From Saccostrea cucullata (lineage: Eukaryota), in assembly GCF_032062105.1 (NCBI RefSeq), contig NW_026929448.1:248001-312000 (forward strand): 64,000 nucleotides of DNA. Reading direction: 5' to 3'. Positions 7,593 to 28,325 of this stretch are shown here, in pieces. The first letter of the stretch is position 1; each line of letters starts with the position of its first letter. The position numbers were made by a program, and so were the translations under genes. Below the pieces are notes generated by a model. It was not told the DNA's origin and made no database searches. It saw nothing but the letters and a program-made list of their open reading frames with translations.

Positions 7593-8270
7593 CTAATTTG
7601 AAGCATCTTTGCTTTTAAGCTTCAATACTGCTGTTTTTATTTCTTGCACATCAGACAGTATTGTCTTTACCATTTCATGCTGATCTTCCATTTTAATCTT
7701 TTCTATTACAGCATCTTCAGTTTCCTTTCTTAAGGTCAGTTTCTGAATTTCATTAAGGTTATCCAAGTATGTCTTTCCAGTGAAAGTTTCCAGTCTTTGG
7801 CAAATATCTACCATCATTGACCAGGTGTCATTGAATTCTGTCTGAGGGATGGAGGCTGAGCTCACATGTGCAGTCAAACTGTTACGGATTGACCTAATTC
7901 TCTCGATATCATCACCCACAGTCACATCTCCTGCTGCAGGCTCATCACCCCATTTTTGTTTTGTTGGTTTAGGAATCTTTTTGCAAATGTTTCTTATCAA
8001 TGTGTATGTTAAAGAAATATCAAAATCCTTATATCCGGAATGTTTTGCATCTGTCAAGTGTTGCTTTTGTTCAGGGCGCAATCTTACATAAAAGTTTAAT
8101 GATGCTTTTGCCTTGTTCTCAATAAGGGAAGGGGAAATCTCAATCTCTAGTATGTCTCGGCATGCCTGATTTAACACATCGTTTGTTGCCATTCCAAGTC
8201 TGGCAAATCTGGACCGGCCCCCAATGTCTTGTCCAGAAGCTGTCGAAGTGCTGGGATTACTCAGTGTTAT
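7593..8270 (-). CDS. Roco gene exon 8 (last): DZIP3/hRUL138-like HEPN domain plus helical tail
   Basis: Acceptor cttgttccag|ATA (phase 0). DFDISLTYTLIRN...WG.EP...VGDDIERIRSIRNSLTAH contains the HEPN R-x4-6-H motif. Stop TAG at 7593-7595. Confidence 0.85.
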   Translation of the reverse strand: MTLSNPSTSTASGQDIGGRSRFARLGMATNDVLNQACRDILEIEISPSLIENKAKASLNFYVRLRPEQKQHLTDAKHSGYKDFDISLTYTLIRNICKKIPKPTKQKWGDEPAAGDVTVGDDIERIRSIRNSLTAHVSSASIPQTEFNDTWSMMVDICQRLETFTGKTYLDNLNEIQKLTLRKETEDAVIEKIKMEDQHEMVKTILSDVQEIKTAVLKLKSKDASN

Positions 8271-8340
8271 CTGGAACAAGATTTCACCACATTTAGTTAA
8301 AAAAAAACCACGCATATTAGGAGGAAAATATAAAATAACT

Positions 8341-8343
<3 letters not shown>

Positions 8344-8380
<37 letters not shown>

Positions 8381-9672
8381 GCTTTGACCATTCTGTTCTT
8401 TACCAGATTTCATCCTTGTTATACATAATGCATCCCCACCCTACCCCACTGATCATAATTTAGACATTTTGAAATCTACACTACCCCATGATTCTTCCAT
8501 GGGCACATATGTTTCGGCTTTTTTTGGCCCAGTGGTTCCTGAGAAGAAGATTTTCAAAGATTTTTCCTATATATTTCTATGTAAAACTTTAATTCCCTAT
8601 AATGGCCCCGCCCTTCCCCCGGGGGTCATGATTCCTACAATTTAGAATTTACACTACCCCAGAATGCTTCAACATAAGCTTCACTTTTTCTGGCCCAGTG
8701 GTTCTTGAGAAGAAAATTTTCAAAGAATTTTCCTATATATTTCTAAATAAAACTTTGATTCCCCATTGTGGCCCCGCCCTTCCCCCAGGTGTCATTATTT
8801 GAACAATTTAGAAATTACATTATACCAGGATGCTTCCACATAAGTTTCAGCTTTTCAGGCCCAGTGGTTCTTGAGAAGAAGATTTTCAAACATTTTTCCT
8901 ATATATTTCTATGTAAAATTTTGATACCCCATTGTGGCCCCGCCCTTCCCCTGGGGGTCATGATTTGAACAATTTAGAATCTACACTATACCAGGATGCT
9001 TCCACATAAGTTTCAGCTTTTCTGGCCGAGTGGTTCTTGAGAAGACGATTTTCAAAGATTTTTCCTATATATTTCTATATAAAACTTTGATTCCCCAATG
9101 TGGCCCCGCCCTTCCCCCAGGTGTCATTATTTGAACAATTTAGAATCTACATTATACCAGGATGCTTCCACATAAGTTTCAGCTTTTCTGGCCCAGTGGT
9201 TCTTGAGAAGAAAATTTTCAAACATTTTTCCTATATATTTCTATGTAAAACTTTGATACCCCATTGTGGCCCCGCCCTTCCCCTGGGGGTCATGATTTGA
9301 ACAATTTGGAATCTACACTATACCAAGATGCTTCCATATAAGTTTCAGCTTTTCTGGCCCAGTGGTTCTTGAGAAGAAGATTTTCAAAGATTTTTCCTAT
9401 ATATTTCTATATAAAACTTTGATTCCCCATTGTGGCCCCGCCCTTCCCCCGGGGGTCATGATTTGAACAATTTAGAATCTACACTACCCCAGGATGCTTC
9501 CACATAAGTTTCAGCTTTACTGGGCCAGTGGTTCTTGAGAAGAAGATTTTTTAATGACCCCACCCTATTTTTGTCTTTTCTTCATCATCCCCCCTTGCGA
9601 GGGGATATGTCCCTTCATTTTAACAATTTATATTCCCCTTTACCCAAGGATGCTTTGTACCAAGTTTGGTCA

Positions 9673-9709
<37 letters not shown>

Positions 9710-24857: not shown

Positions 24858-25028
24858 CCTCCATCCTGTGAATGTTGTCAAACAATGTCTTTATCTTTCT
24901 AAGTTCATGTCTGCTGTGATCCTCAGAGCTGGTACACTCCACACACAAGGGAACACCACACGGGGTACAGAACTGGTCCAGGGGAATTCTGGGATGTTTT
25001 CTACATTTGATGTCCTCCAGAGGGACTC
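24858..25028 (-). CDS. Roco gene exon 2: B-box type 2 zinc finger (absent from the ORF track)
   Basis: 171-bp phase 1-1 exon (tttttaacag| ... |gtaaga) translating CRKHPRIPLDQFCTPCGVPLCVECTSSEDHSRH. Confidence 0.85.
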
Positions 25029-27120
25029 CTGTTAAAAATAAAAAAAGTCTTATATTGTAAATACTTTTTAAAAATCCTGATTAATCTTCACAAAACAATG
25101 TCAATTTGGTACTCATATATATAAAGAAAGTCCAAATATTTATGATATTGGAGTAGTTAAAATGTTTTGAGTTCAAAAATTTTAAAATAAAATCTTGATA
25201 TTTACATTCATTAGAAAAACCATTTGTGATTTTCATTATGCCAATAAATACTAAGGGAGATAATTTTGTTCTGATAAAACATCGTTGATTAATTATCTCA
25301 AATGATTATGTATGGGGATTTCTTGTTTCCAATATCATCACCATTATAACAATATAAAACTAGAGGTACTGTGAGCAATGGGCTCACTAAATGATACCCC
25401 CCGCCTCCCATATATGTATAAATGGCAGTGTCCATGTTTTGCTATGGGAAACCCAAAATATGTGTCATAAAAAGTAAAATAGGAAGTGTCTTTTAGCTAA
25501 GTACTGATGACCTTAGCTATGCTCACATGACCTTTGTTCAGAGTTAACTCCACTCAAAATTCACTGAATACAAACATATATATATATGTGGTTGGATGTA
25601 AATTATAAATGAAAACAATCCAAAAATTTTCTCATAAATTGAAATAGGTCATATGAGTTCGCAATAATGAGAAAATACTGACATAATAGTACAGACATAT
25701 CATATATTACCCCCCCCCCCTTCCCTTAGCATCAATACTTAGTTCAGTAACCGTGTAAACCACAGAAATCAACCCTACATATCTCTGTCAGTGACCTCCA
25801 ATGCTTGTAAAAGGGTAAAAATGAAAACATTTTCAGTGCATTATCATCTAAGGGCTTCCAGTCTCTTAAATTCATGTGGTTGGGATACATAGGGTTACAA
25901 ATTGACAGAATAAATCTAGTACAAGTATTTTCTCCTTTACCATATCTTGTACTTACACTTGATACAGGTAGTGATAAGGAAATTATATTTTTAGTTTTAT
26001 GGATCAACTTTTTTGAAACAAAGCAGGAGGCTAATTTGTTTTTTTAAAAGGAATTATTTTAAAACTTTTATTATGAAAAGGGAGGTAACTTAATTTTTTC
26101 TTTACCTTCAAATACAAAATTGAATTGTCTCCCTTTCATTAGCAAGTTAATAAAATTATTCAATGCAGTTGCATTCATGCTTATTCTATAGTTTCTAAGA
26201 AATATTTTTTTGTTCATAAAAATGAAATGAATCTTAAGCATCAGTGTGGACTTAAAGCTTGAATAATGTTGGTTATCTCGGACCTCCATATTTCATTAGA
26301 CATCTAGAACTTTCCCATACAAAAAATGTCACTCCAGTACACAGTGTAGATTTACTGAACACCTGCTACAGAAATACACAACATTCCTAGACAGAGCTGT
26401 GTTAATATCAATGGTGTCTATATCAAACTGTCAACATTAGTACAAATTGTCATCTCTTCTGAATGTAGAATTACTTAAACTGAATACATTATCATGATTA
26501 TATAGGACTTTGTAAAAAATAAAAAAAAAATTCATCTGCTATTTCTCAAAACTGATCATACAACACCAAATGTATTTATTGAACAAAACTTCACACAATT
26601 TCAAAAGTTGATTATTACCCCAAAGACAGTATATGGTACATATATCTATAATTCAAAGCCTATCTGTCAAACAAATAGATGTATGAATAATATACCACAA
26701 GATGGTTCTGATAAAATTTTACAAAAAAGTTTGACATAAGATTCAGTATATACATGTATGAATCAGTGATTGAAGAGTGACACACAACATCTTACAATTC
26801 ATTACAGACTAGATGTTAATCTATCATTTCTTTTAAATCTTTTTATTATATACCCATCAATTTCCTTGTTTTTGTTACTGTTAATTTTACAGAGTTTGAT
26901 CCGATTTTCCGGATCACCACACTGTGGTTTTCTGAATCCATATCACCACTCTCTGAAACTGATGACGTAGTACGCAAAAACATGATGTTATTTTTCTTGC
27001 GCATTAAAAAGTCCTTAGTTATTATGCTTTGTTTTATGGATAAATGTTATACAATTGATCTCTTAAGTTTTATTCTGCTACATTTAGCTAGTTATAAGGG
27101 GGTATATAATAAATGTATCA

Positions 27121-27275
27121 TTATAACAGTAACTTGATCCGAAGAGCCGTATCACGTCTCGTTGACAGGCGCGGATCATCAGATCACACTCGACGCTTCG
27201 CGTCTCGTGAGATCTGATGATCCGCACCTGTCAACTCGACGTGATACGACCCTTCGGACCAAGTTACTGTTATAA
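27121..27275. mobile_element. Palindromic MITE (~155 bp)
   Basis: ttataacagtaacttgatccgaag... is an imperfect reverse complement of ...cttcggaccaagttactgttataa over its whole length. Confidence 0.65.
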
Positions 27276-27493
27276 TAATATATATTTATCATATTTGTGG
27301 TCAGAAAATTCATCTTTAACAGCTTATATTTGTTGTTTACACAATGAGCAATCATTTCTATTAGATTTGTAAATAAACACTTGAATACATTCATGTAAAG
27401 TCATTCTAAAATGACCTCTCTATTACAATGTAGTTATTTAGTATTGTTATAATAATTATACAATAAAATAAAACAGACTACAATGTTACTTAC

Positions 27494-28325
27494 CAGTCAA
27501 AGAGTCTGTATCTACCACTCTGTATAGGTGGACTGTGTTGTTGGCCCATGCCCCTACCCACAGTAGATTAGTGTCATCATTATAACTCAGGCCCTGTGGA
27601 TACTTTATCCCGTGTTGTTGTGTCAGTATCTCTGTCAGATAGTGACCATCACTATCTAACATCTTTACTGACGGTGTGTCTAGATCACAGACCAGGATGT
27701 GTGACAGCGCGTCAGTACAGATTCCTAGTGGTATTAATTGTGATCCTGATGGAGGACCTGTGTAGGAGAATCGGTAATTACCGTCACGATCTGTCACCAC
27801 TACAGCCTCACGTAACAAGTCAGACACAATAACATCTCCATTGCGGTTCTCTGTGATGTAGATAGGATCATTATACAGTCCCTGACCTGTGTTGTTGTGG
27901 TGCTGTATGGTCTGGATGTTTTCTCCTGTGGAGTTATACCGCACTACCTTGCCTGTCCTTGTATCACCTCTACACATCCCGACCAGCAGGTCTCCAGTGG
28001 AGGGGGAGCTGTAGACACTCCGTGGTTCCCATGGTGCTGTGTTGTACTTTATTATCGTAGTCTTTTCTCTGTTATCTTTGGACAGTTTAATGATGTTATA
28101 TTCACTGTCTATATAAATTAGATCACCATTAGAGTCCACAGCGTGTACTCCCACATCACTACCTATATCTGTCACACTGTCTAGTTCTTCCCCTTTAGTG
28201 TTTGTCAGTATAAGATTGCCTTCATCATCACTGATCCAGACCCGGTCTGATGACACACGTGAAATGTGCCAACACTGACTAACACCAGACACGGTGACAG
28301 ATTTCTGGTACACTCCTCTATACAT
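27494..28325 (-). CDS. Roco gene exon 1 (coding): NHL-repeat beta-propeller, TRIM2/3/71-like
   Basis: PIYITENRNGDVIVSD, PLGICTDALSHILVCD, PQGLSYND repeats. Donor G|gtaagt at 27493 (phase 1). ATG at 28325 is the first in-frame start after two stops. Confidence 0.82.

What the first reader, a model, noticed from the sequence alone, without database searches (positions are those of the whole stretch)
7593..28325. NHL-B-box-Roc-COR-HEPN gene: candidate GTPase-switched RNase immune receptor
Seen: eight exons with GT-AG sites and matching phases (27494-28325, 24858-25028, 23661-24119, 22901-23149, 13294-13818, 11446-11543, 10052-11224, 7593-8270) sum to 4185 nt, giving 1394 aa with no internal stop. 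Roc G1 (GCAGSGKT), G3 (DFAGQ) and G4-like (VGTHSE) motifs are present, and the HEPN motif RNSLTAH is intact. Established: Roc-COR modules (LRRK2, DAPK1, MFHAS1) are dimerising GTPase switches; HEPN RNases (RNase L/Ire1 KEN, Cas13, bacterial toxins) need two R-x4-6-H motifs juxtaposed; NHL propellers of TRIM71/Brat bind RNA. Inference: an RNA- or ligand-sensing propeller could control COR-driven dimerisation of a HEPN RNase, a kinase-free analogue of RNase L or NLR logic. I know of no characterised protein with this arrangement.
Basis: partly seen in the sequence, partly recalled or inferred. Interest (0 to 1): 0.85.

Follow-up and report, generated by a model that had tools for sequence, protein, structure and literature searches.

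The report
Oyster NHL/B-box Roco GTPase with HEPN tail
This is a real, intact, spliced rock-oyster gene that joins a TRIM-type NHL propeller and B-box to a LRRK2-type GTPase switch and a predicted RNA-cutting HEPN domain. It is one copy of a large, untested family of candidate immune sensors whose tail domain is swapped between copies.

Summary
All eight minus-strand exons have GT..AG borders and matching phases, and give 1394 codons with no internal stop.

Domain searches exon by exon confirm the order:
- a TRIM2/3-type NHL propeller;
- a B-box;
- an unassigned 152-aa segment;
- a Roc GTPase split over three exons, with a roughly 110-aa disordered insert;
- COR-A and COR-B;
- a DZIP3-type HEPN domain.

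RNA reads and contigs show the first three junctions, including NHL to B-box. The other four rest on ten collinear RefSeq models of paralogues.

The gene is not unique. The genome is Saccostrea cucullata. It holds at least 40 copies of the COR exon and hundreds of HEPN_DZIP3 exons. Paralogues carry Death, trypsin-like, caspase, TIR or ankyrin domains in the HEPN position. The tail is swapped at one shared phase-0 intron.

Both the COR and the HEPN exon are under purifying selection.

An immune sensor-switch-effector reading is well supported by comparison. RNase activity and GTP- or dimer-gating are untested. I found no paper describing this build. This scan had already met the same Roco-HEPN family on other contigs of this genome.

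The parts
27494..28325 (-). Exon 1: start codon (28323-28325) and a complete six-blade NHL beta-propeller of 277 aa. It ends in phase 1.
   Evidence: One search gives the translation. In one search the Pfam NHL hit is marginal (21.3 bits against a cut-off of 20). In one search a profile of 17 paralogue N-termini hits the solved NHL domains of TRIM3 (1.2e-28), TRIM2, Thin, TRIM71 and Brat. One search shows it spliced to exon 2.
24858..25028 (-). Exon 2: B-box type 2 zinc finger. The pattern C-x2-H-x8-C-x2-C-x4-C-x2-C-x5-H-x2-H is complete. The exon is symmetrical, phase 1 to 1.
   Evidence: zf-B_box at 1.1e-10, 41.9 bits. One search gives the sequence. One search shows both junctions in RNA.
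23661..24119 (-). Exon 3: conserved 152-aa segment of unknown fold between the B-box and Roc. It is not a coiled coil. Phase 1 to 1.
   Evidence: no Pfam hit; 28 invariant columns among 17 paralogues; mixed alpha/beta model, best pLDDT 72 but the other four models only 36-51; best structural match Z 4.2. Atlas search blank.
22901..23149 (-). Exon 4: N-terminal part of the Roc GTPase, with the P-loop GCAGSGKT (23016-23039) and the switch-I Thr. Phase 1 to 1.
   Evidence: Roc profile positions 3-41; aligned to the G1 motif of the Methanosarcina barkeri Roco 4wnr and of LRRK2; junction to exon 3 seen, and an X3 contig stops matching at 22901.
13294..13818 (-). Exon 5: an acidic, Ser/Thr-rich insert of about 110 aa, then the Roc core with G3 DFAGQ (13442-13456). 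Phase 1 to 1.
   Evidence: One search gives the sequence. Roc profile positions 49-92 at exon residues 111-152; the insert falls between profile positions 81 and 191, which are contiguous in 4wnr.
11446..11543 (-). Exon 6: end of Roc, with the G4-like motif T-H-S-E (11461-11472). Phase 1 to 0.
   Evidence: One search gives the sequence. Roc profile positions 95-118; the His and Glu are invariant in 15 relatives.
10052..11224 (-). Exon 7: COR-A and COR-B in a single exon, ending in a conserved Cys/His cluster. Phase 0 to 0.
   Evidence: COR-A at 1.2e-8; COR-B weak; the profile spans Roc into COR-A of LRRK2 (about 1e-14) and the Chlorobium tepidum Roco; dN/dS 0.14-0.22; the same donor codon is used in HEPN-type and Death-type paralogues.
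7593..8270 (-). Exon 8: DZIP3-type HEPN domain with R-x5-H (RNSLTAH, 7866-7886), a long C-terminal helix, and the stop codon (7593-7595).
   Evidence: HEPN_DZIP3 at 5.3e-23, 81.9 bits, profile positions 23-142 of 144. Arg and Asn are invariant, and His is present in 15 of 16 sequences; all-helical model, pLDDT 78; the top structural match is the HEPN domain of Csm6 (Z 8.2, within helical noise); dN/dS 0.23-0.34.

Best explanation
The locus is one intact, transcribed member of a tandemly expanded oyster (Saccostrea cucullata) family of kinase-less Roco proteins, built as sensor, switch and output.

Shown here:
- The N-terminal TRIM2/3-type NHL propeller and the B-box form the likely ligand-binding and self-association end.
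- A Roc GTPase followed directly by COR forms the nucleotide-dependent switch and dimerisation unit, as in LRRK2 and bacterial Rocos.
- The last exon supplies a DZIP3-type HEPN domain with an intact R-x5-H motif.
- This output position is interchangeable between paralogues. HEPN, Death, trypsin-like peptidase, caspase/CARD, TIR or ankyrin domains follow COR in relatives. On this very contig a Death-type copy uses the same phase-0 donor.
- Both the COR and the HEPN exon evolve under purifying selection.

Inferred:
- The family works in innate immunity or cell-death surveillance.
- Ligand binding at the NHL/B-box end changes the Roc nucleotide state and COR-mediated dimerisation or oligomerisation.
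- This brings two HEPN domains together to form an active RNase that cuts viral, transposon or host RNA.

My odds: gene model 0.9; membership of the Roco family 0.95; immune or cell-death role 0.6; HEPN is an active RNase 0.5; activity is gated by GTP and dimerisation 0.35.
For: - Gene model.
- Domains: B-box 1e-10, COR-A 1e-8, HEPN_DZIP3 5e-23, Roc collinear over three exons; NHL profile against TRIM3, TRIM2, TRIM71 and Brat structures, 1e-28 to 1e-13; Roc-COR profile against M. barkeri Roco at 1.7e-18 and LRRK2 at about 1e-14.
- Motif conservation.
- Variable output domains: (Death, Trypsin_2, Ank). In one search, of 42 long relatives, 40 have Roc and COR, 12 HEPN_DZIP3, 5 Death, 2 caspase, 2 TIR, 2 CARD and 2 Trypsin_2.
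- Tail swapping: searches show a Death-type and an HEPN-type paralogue on the same 396-kb contig with an identical COR-exon donor.
- Constraint.
- Expansion and clustering.
- Literature: the oyster expansion of DZIP3 HEPN proteins and the Rx4-6H motif as a putative RNase site (PMC3710099, PMC9646362); bacterial LRR, Roc, COR proteins with more than 24 alternative C-terminal effectors read as counter-invader systems (PMC8195603).
Against: - No experiment exists on any member. From my own knowledge, human DZIP3 is known as an RNA-binding ubiquitin ligase, not as an RNase.
- The G4 guanine-specificity Asp is Glu in this subfamily (THSE), so nucleotide preference is uncertain.
- The fold match of the HEPN model to Csm6 is within the noise for helical bundles.
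- Junctions 4-5 to 7-8 of this very locus were not seen in RNA. Reads at 95% likeness cannot exclude the 95-96% paralogues.
- No induction data were examined.
- Some paralogues are decaying, so the family turns over quickly.
Confidence: 0.55

Rival explanations
1. The gene is real, but the HEPN domain is not a nuclease. It would be an RNA-binding or protein-interaction module, as assumed for human DZIP3. The protein would then be a GTPase scaffold or adaptor, signalling like its Death-domain paralogues rather than cutting RNA.
For: The closest paralogues carry a pure adaptor (Death) in the same slot. No RNase activity has been reported for any DZIP3-clade HEPN in the literature I could search. 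One C. virginica relative lacks the His (P0224).
Against: Arg and Asn of the motif are invariant, and His is kept in 15 of 16 sequences across two HEPN subtypes. In the pearl oyster, 194 of 202 proteins keep Rx4-6H (PMC9646362). dN/dS is 0.23-0.34. Other slots in the family hold true enzymes: trypsin-like peptidase, caspase and TIR.
Confidence: 0.27
2. This particular copy is a young, silent or redundant duplicate. The RNA evidence would come from near-identical paralogues or alleles, and the locus contributes nothing on its own.
For: There are at least 40 COR-exon copies, three of them at 95-96% DNA identity. Most laid reads were 95-99% alike rather than 99% or more. Neighbouring copies show stops, frame breaks and decayed pseudo-exons. 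No database protein is 95% or more identical to exon 8.
Against: The frame is open over 1394 codons with all seven splice sites intact. Coverage is confined to exons, and 21 junction reads fit this sequence. The closest paralogues differ from this copy by 26-27% in the HEPN exon protein, so this copy is not a simple recent duplicate. Purifying selection is seen in comparisons that involve this copy.
Confidence: 0.12
3. Two genes: a stand-alone NHL (or NHL plus B-box) gene upstream, and a separate Roc-COR-HEPN gene.
For: Left unspliced, the NHL frame would close two codons after the donor (ORF listing). Several RefSeq paralogue models lack the propeller (P0001, P0188).
Against: Junction reads and contigs join exon 1 to 2, 2 to 3 and 3 to 4. 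Ten RefSeq models carry the propeller and the HEPN domain in one protein.
Confidence: 0.03

Closest known systems
Roco proteins (LRRK2, DAPK1, MFHAS1, bacterial and archaeal Rocos)
   Same: A Roc GTPase is followed directly by COR-A and COR-B. The family profile matches solved M. barkeri, C. tepidum and LRRK2 Roc-COR structures. Sensor repeats lie N-terminal and an output domain C-terminal.
   Different: There is no kinase and no LRR. The output is a HEPN domain, and the sensor end is an NHL propeller plus a B-box. Roc carries a disordered insert of about 110 aa. G4 reads T-H-x-E instead of T-H-x-D.
Bacterial LRR, Roc (AP-GTPase), COR proteins with variable effectors, read as counter-invader systems (Kaur et al. 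2021, PMC8195603)
   Same: The logic is the same: a rapidly evolving sensor, a Roc-COR switch, and many alternative C-terminal effectors (TIR, caspase, trypsin) in paralogous copies within one genome.
   Different: This one is animal, intron-bearing and swapped by exon. HEPN is not among the effectors that paper names. The sensor is NHL/B-box, not LRR.
Bivalve DZIP3/hRUL138-type HEPN expansions, including NACHT-HEPN NLR-like proteins (PMC3710099, PMC9646362)
   Same: The HEPN clade is the same (PF18738), with Rx4-6H retained. There is a large lineage-specific expansion in oysters, and an antiviral or anti-transposon RNase role has been proposed.
   Different: [quoted passage not shown] Roc-COR, B-box and NHL partners are not mentioned. 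Here the switch is a GTPase, not a STAND ATPase, and HEPN is C-terminal.
TRIM-NHL proteins (TRIM2, TRIM3, TRIM71, Brat, Thin)
   Same: The NHL propeller is clearly of this type (1e-28 to TRIM3), and a type-2 B-box is present.
   Different: There is no RING and no coiled coil. The propeller is N-terminal to the B-box, which inverts the usual order. The rest of the protein is a Roco-HEPN.
RNase L / Ire1 (KEN-type HEPN RNases activated by dimerisation)
   Same: They offer a functional analogy only: a ligand-controlled dimer brings two HEPN domains together.
   Different: The HEPN clade differs. There is no pseudokinase or kinase domain, no ankyrin 2-5A sensor, and no evidence yet for dimer-dependent activity.

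Membership tests
Roco (Roc-COR) GTPases | Ras-like Roc domain with P-loop G1 (GxxxxGK[ST]) and G3 (DxxG) | tested here: met
   GCAGSGKT and DFAGQ are present. The Roc Pfam profile is collinear over exons 4-6. The family profile aligns G1 and G3 to 4wnr and LRRK2.
Roco (Roc-COR) GTPases | COR domain immediately C-terminal to Roc | tested here: met
   COR-A at 1.2e-8, 35.4 bits against a cut-off of 35.3; COR-B weak. One profile stretch spans Roc into COR-A of LRRK2 residues 1386-1614.
Roco (Roc-COR) GTPases | G4 guanine-specificity motif ([NT]KxD, or THxD in LRRK2) | tested here: not met
   The motif is T-H-S-E. His and Glu are invariant in the subfamily. More distant relatives keep THxD (consensus). 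The consequence for nucleotide choice is unknown.
Roco (Roc-COR) GTPases | GTP binding and hydrolysis, and COR-mediated dimerisation | not testable with these tools
   This needs biochemistry.
HEPN superfamily, DZIP3/hRUL138 clade (PF18738) | Profile match above the curated cut-off | tested here: met
   81.9 bits against a cut-off of 27, covering profile positions 23-142 of 144.
HEPN superfamily, DZIP3/hRUL138 clade (PF18738) | R-x4-6-H motif | tested here: met
   RNSLTAH is R-x5-H. The Arg and the following Asn are invariant, and His is present in 15 of 16 aligned relatives.
HEPN superfamily, DZIP3/hRUL138 clade (PF18738) | Four-helix up-down HEPN fold | tested here: inconclusive
   The model is all-helical with pLDDT 78. 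Foldseek found nothing. The VIA-align top hit is the Csm6 HEPN domain (Z 8.2, 113 aligned residues), and the Swt1 HEPN domain scores Z 6.1. Both are inside the noise range for helical bundles.
HEPN superfamily, DZIP3/hRUL138 clade (PF18738) | Metal-independent RNase activity from a dimeric composite site | not testable with these tools
   This needs an enzyme assay.
TRIM-NHL proteins | N-terminal RING finger | tested here: not met
   No RING hit in any exon. The frame starts at the NHL exon, with an in-frame stop just upstream.
TRIM-NHL proteins | B-box followed by a coiled coil, with NHL repeats at the C-terminus | tested here: not met
   The B-box and the NHL propeller are both present, but the propeller precedes the B-box. 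The segment after the B-box is modelled as mixed alpha/beta, not as a coiled coil.
NLR / STAND NTPase receptors | NACHT or NB-ARC STAND ATPase core | tested here: not met
   There are only short P-loop matches (NACHT E 0.02, 17 residues). The NTPase is a Roc GTPase.

The most novel reading that the evidence does not exclude
The family would be an animal counterpart of bacterial Roc-COR counter-invader proteins. The NHL propeller (possibly with the B-box) would sense viral RNA or an altered-self ligand. The Roc-COR unit would turn this into GTP-dependent dimerisation. Two HEPN domains would then form a composite RNase, giving a kinase-free, GTPase-gated analogue of RNase L. New sensor-output combinations would arise by exon swapping at compatible intron phases.
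Probability: 0.3. Interest if true: 0.85.

Novelty: new variant of a known kind. Interest (0 to 1): 0.6.

Why it matters
Roco GTPases are studied mainly because of LRRK2, where the output is a kinase and the biological trigger is still debated. HEPN RNases are central to CRISPR, toxin-antitoxin and interferon defence.

A family in which the same Roc-COR switch drives an RNase-type, Death, protease, caspase or TIR output gives a natural experiment on what Roc-COR does as a switch. It would also extend the 'sensor, NTPase, effector' rule of immune receptors from STAND ATPases to GTPases in animals.

The intact copy described here, with a defined propeller sensor and single-exon modules, is a practical construct for biochemical tests. 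For oyster biology, it adds a large unstudied gene family to the candidates for resistance to viral and bacterial disease.

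Tried and rejected
1. HEPN homodimer prediction: score 0.02, verdict 'no answer'. It is not evidence either way.
2. Foldseek of the HEPN model against the PDB: nothing at E 0.001 or better.
3. Sequence profile of the HEPN exon against PDB sequences: only spurious ubiquitin-level hits, so no solved DZIP3-clade HEPN relative exists by sequence.
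4. Exon 3. There was no Pfam hit and the Atlas search was blank. The AlphaFold model was inconsistent across the five runs. The best structural match, Z 4.2, consists of winged-helix-like hits below noise. The segment stays unassigned, and a TRIM-type coiled coil is rejected.
5. Search for a Death, trypsin-like or second HEPN exon elsewhere in the window: none, so alternative terminal exons are rejected for this locus.
6. Search for a database protein 95% or more identical to exon 8, to prove junction 7-8 for this locus: none.
7. Attempt to find the window's own annotated protein among RefSeq hits: the best matches are paralogues at 68-93% identity per exon. The locus lies between LOC134280863 and LOC134280874 on the same contig, but its own model was not retrieved.
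8. A scan for a poly(A) signal is uninformative in this AT-rich DNA. Minus-strand AATAAA sites lie at 7216-7221 and 6956-6985.
9. The two-gene reading was rejected on the junction reads.

Full report
**Observation.**

A script over the window shows that the eight minus-strand exons add up to 4185 nt. Each of the seven introns begins GT and ends AG, the phases fit, and the translation has 1394 codons and only the terminal stop. GCAGSGKT, DFAGQ, VGTHSE and RNSLTAH lie at residues 525, 692, 768 and 1298. An in-frame TAA sits two codons before the ATG at 28325. There are no N runs in the window.

In that script the exons were joined only to check frame and motif positions. The joined protein was not sent to any search, fold or complex tool. 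All searches were done exon by exon by reference, or with database proteins of paralogues.

**Domains.**

- **Pfam, exon by exon.**
  - B-box in exon 2: 1.1e-10.
  - Roc, split collinearly over exons 4, 5 and 6: profile positions 3-41, 49-92 and 95-118.
  - COR-A (1.2e-8) and a weak COR-B in exon 7.
  - HEPN_DZIP3 in exon 8: 5.3e-23, profile positions 23-142 of 144.
  - The NHL hit in exon 1 is marginal.
- **NHL propeller.** A profile of 17 paralogue N-termini matches the solved NHL propellers of TRIM3 (1.2e-28), TRIM2, Thin, TRIM71 and Brat over their whole length. Exon 1 therefore encodes a complete TRIM2/3-type six-blade propeller.
- **Roc-COR.** A Roc-COR profile matches the Methanosarcina barkeri Roco (1.7e-18), LRRK2 (about 1e-14, one stretch running from Roc into COR-A) and the Chlorobium tepidum Roco.
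  - The same alignment shows an insert of about 110 residues between switch I and G3. In the window this insert is acidic and rich in Ser and Thr.
  - G4 reads T-H-S-E. The Glu that replaces the usual Asp is invariant in the subfamily, whereas more distant relatives keep THxD.
- **Exon 3.** This 152-aa segment is conserved but has no recognisable family or fold. It is not a coiled coil.
- **HEPN exon.** It models as a helical bundle with a long C-terminal helix (pLDDT 78). Its best structural neighbour is the HEPN domain of Csm6 (Z 8.2), but this is within noise for helical proteins.

**Transcription.**

I laid four runs on window 22800-28400.

| Junction | Evidence |
|---|---|
| 25028\|27494 (NHL to B-box) | 21 raw oligo-dT reads from 19 start points, plus contigs in two other studies |
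| 24119\|24858 | 4 raw reads plus contigs |
| 23149\|23661 | contigs in two runs |

- All three junctions have the expected CT..AC ends.
- One contig stops matching exactly at the exon-4 donor.
- Coverage follows the exons. The very deep islands inside introns are repeats.
- Variant junction forms with a few different letters show that paralogues are spliced in the same way.

They rest on the collinear Roc profile and on ten RefSeq proteins of 1346-1406 aa that align over all eight exons at the same borders. P0153, for example, is 78, 88, 80, 88, 84, 91, 92 and 68% identical to exons 1-8.

**Where it comes from, and how many there are.**

- **Species.** P0153 and P0170 are encoded at about 100% identity on contigs of the window's genome. 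P0151 and P0188 lie on the window's own 395,971-bp contig. The genome is therefore the RefSeq assembly of the hooded rock oyster, Saccostrea cucullata.
- **Copy number.** The genome holds at least 40 copies of the COR exon at 77-96% DNA identity. It has at least 150 scored HEPN_DZIP3 matches out of 891 first-look candidates.
- **Neighbours.** The window's contig carries three family members. One HEPN-type gene lies at about 29-32 kb. The gene studied here lies at 255.6-276.3 kb. One Death-type gene lies at about 358-365 kb.
- **S. echinata.** Thirteen of the hits sit on one 12.4-Mb scaffold.

**The tail is a swappable output.**

- The closest relative by COR sequence (P0001, 88%) has a Death domain instead of HEPN. 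Others have a trypsin-like peptidase or ankyrin repeats.
- Of 42 long representatives of the COR-exon relatives:

  | Domain | Relatives |
  |---|---|
  | Roc and COR | 40 |
  | HEPN_DZIP3 | 12 |
  | Death | 5 |
  | Ankyrin | 4 |
  | Caspase | 2 |
  | TIR | 2 |
  | CARD | 2 |
  | Trypsin_2 | 2 |

  Single examples carry Bcl-2, patatin or PARP14-like domains.
- In HEPN-type and Death-type paralogues alike, the COR exon ends at the same codon (..K-Y-W-K/E-Q, then GT) in phase 0.
- Exons 2-5 are all symmetrical phase 1-1, and each main module occupies one exon.
- Identity to paralogues is mosaic exon by exon.
- Between the same gene pairs, synonymous divergence of the HEPN exon (0.45-0.9) is three to four times that of the COR exon (0.13-0.22). 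The two exons therefore have different histories, through exon exchange or gene conversion.
- Both exons are constrained: dN/dS is 0.14-0.22 for COR and 0.23-0.34 for HEPN.
- The Arg and Asn of the HEPN motif are invariant, and the His is present in 15 of 16 relatives across two HEPN subtypes.

**Interpretation.**

The anatomy and the company this Roc-COR clade keeps (death-fold adaptors, caspases, TIR, proteases, HEPN) argue for a role in innate immunity or cell-death surveillance. The NHL and B-box would be the sensing and assembly end, Roc-COR the switch, and HEPN one of several outputs. This much is comparative inference.

Three further steps rest only on analogy with Roco dimers and with HEPN RNases such as RNase L, Csm6 and Cas13:
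- that the HEPN domain cuts RNA;
- that it needs dimerisation;
- that GTP gates it.

A homodimer prediction gave no verdict. The main rival is that the HEPN domain binds rather than cuts, which would make the protein an adaptor like its Death-type sisters.

**What is known.**

- Anantharaman et al. 2013 (PMC3710099) defined the DZIP3/hRUL138 HEPN clade. [quoted passage not shown] Roc-COR, B-box and NHL are not listed.
- Takeuchi et al. 2022 (PMC9646362) counted 202 such genes in the pearl oyster. They described NACHT-HEPN proteins and proposed that these degrade viral and transposon RNA.
- Kaur et al. 2021 (PMC8195603) described bacterial LRR, Roc, COR proteins with at least 24 alternative C-terminal effectors as counter-invader systems. 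They also described bivalve expansions of other immune-domain families.
- Full-text searches for Roco with HEPN, and for Roc, COR, B-box and NHL in oysters, found no paper on this build.
- RefSeq predicts the same build as 'uncharacterized protein' in S. cucullata and S. echinata. It predicts Roc-COR-HEPN without the B-box in Crassostrea virginica and Ostrea edulis.
- Earlier notes of this scan describe the same Roco-HEPN family, and the tail swap, on other contigs of this genome. My copy count and my shared-intron result agree with them and were obtained independently.
- What this window adds is an intact copy with the full NHL and B-box head, and RNA proof that the head is spliced to the switch.

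**Verdict.**

It is a new variant of known kinds (Roco switches, bivalve HEPN immune-type expansions) rather than a categorically new system. Interest 0.6.

Noticed in passing
window 73-2064 (+): Two open frames match positions 65-209 and 210-523 of the flavin-containing monooxygenase profile (FMO-like, 3e-44 and 2.8e-76). They are the last exons of a convergent FMO gene that ends about 5.5 kb from the stop of the Roco-HEPN gene.
   Followed up: partly
window 36948-40807 (-): A 607-aa open frame carries RT-RNase H, the integrase zinc-binding domain and the integrase core. It is an LTR-retrotransposon pol fragment upstream of the gene. A further 428-aa frame beside it has no Pfam hit.
   Followed up: partly
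window 22800-22986, 23548-23734, 25231-25604, 26727-27287: These intron stretches have very high summed depth in all four runs, with many loose ends. They look like dispersed repeats expressed from many copies, not exons of this gene.
   Followed up: no
window 10052-10200 (-), end of exon 7: A Cys/His cluster (C-x5-C-x19-C-x2-C-x5-H) lies just before the effector exon. Its ligands are invariant or nearly so in 15 relatives, and a related C..C-x2-H-x3-H pattern occurs in distant ones. It may be a small zinc knuckle between COR-B and the output domain.
   Followed up: partly
window 13487-13816 (-), first 110 codons of exon 5: An acidic, Ser/Thr-rich, probably disordered insert sits inside the Roc domain between switch I and G3. 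It is present family-wide and absent from LRRK2 and the prokaryotic Rocos.
   Followed up: partly
L003 (G000:C1961:26000-35999), L002 (C6666), L009:7017-7442, L004:4143-4635: Signs of decay in paralogues. The HEPN exon of one C1961 copy has a stop. The C6666 COR exon is 95% identical in DNA but only 80% in protein, with gaps, which suggests a frame break; RefSeq annotates only a 301-aa HEPN protein there. Two copies also carry a second, degenerate HEPN pseudo-exon downstream of the functional one.
   Followed up: partly
window exons 7 and 8 compared with L001, L003, L004, L005: Between the same gene pairs, synonymous divergence is 3-4 times higher in the HEPN exon than in the COR exon. Intron 7 is 1781 nt here but about 330 nt in the closest paralogues. 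This points to exon exchange or gene conversion within the family.
   Followed up: partly
run X1: Run X1, listed as 'RNA?', covers introns at low depth and has no depth over exons 1 and 2. For this locus it behaves like DNA or another source, not mRNA, and was not used as RNA evidence.
   Followed up: no
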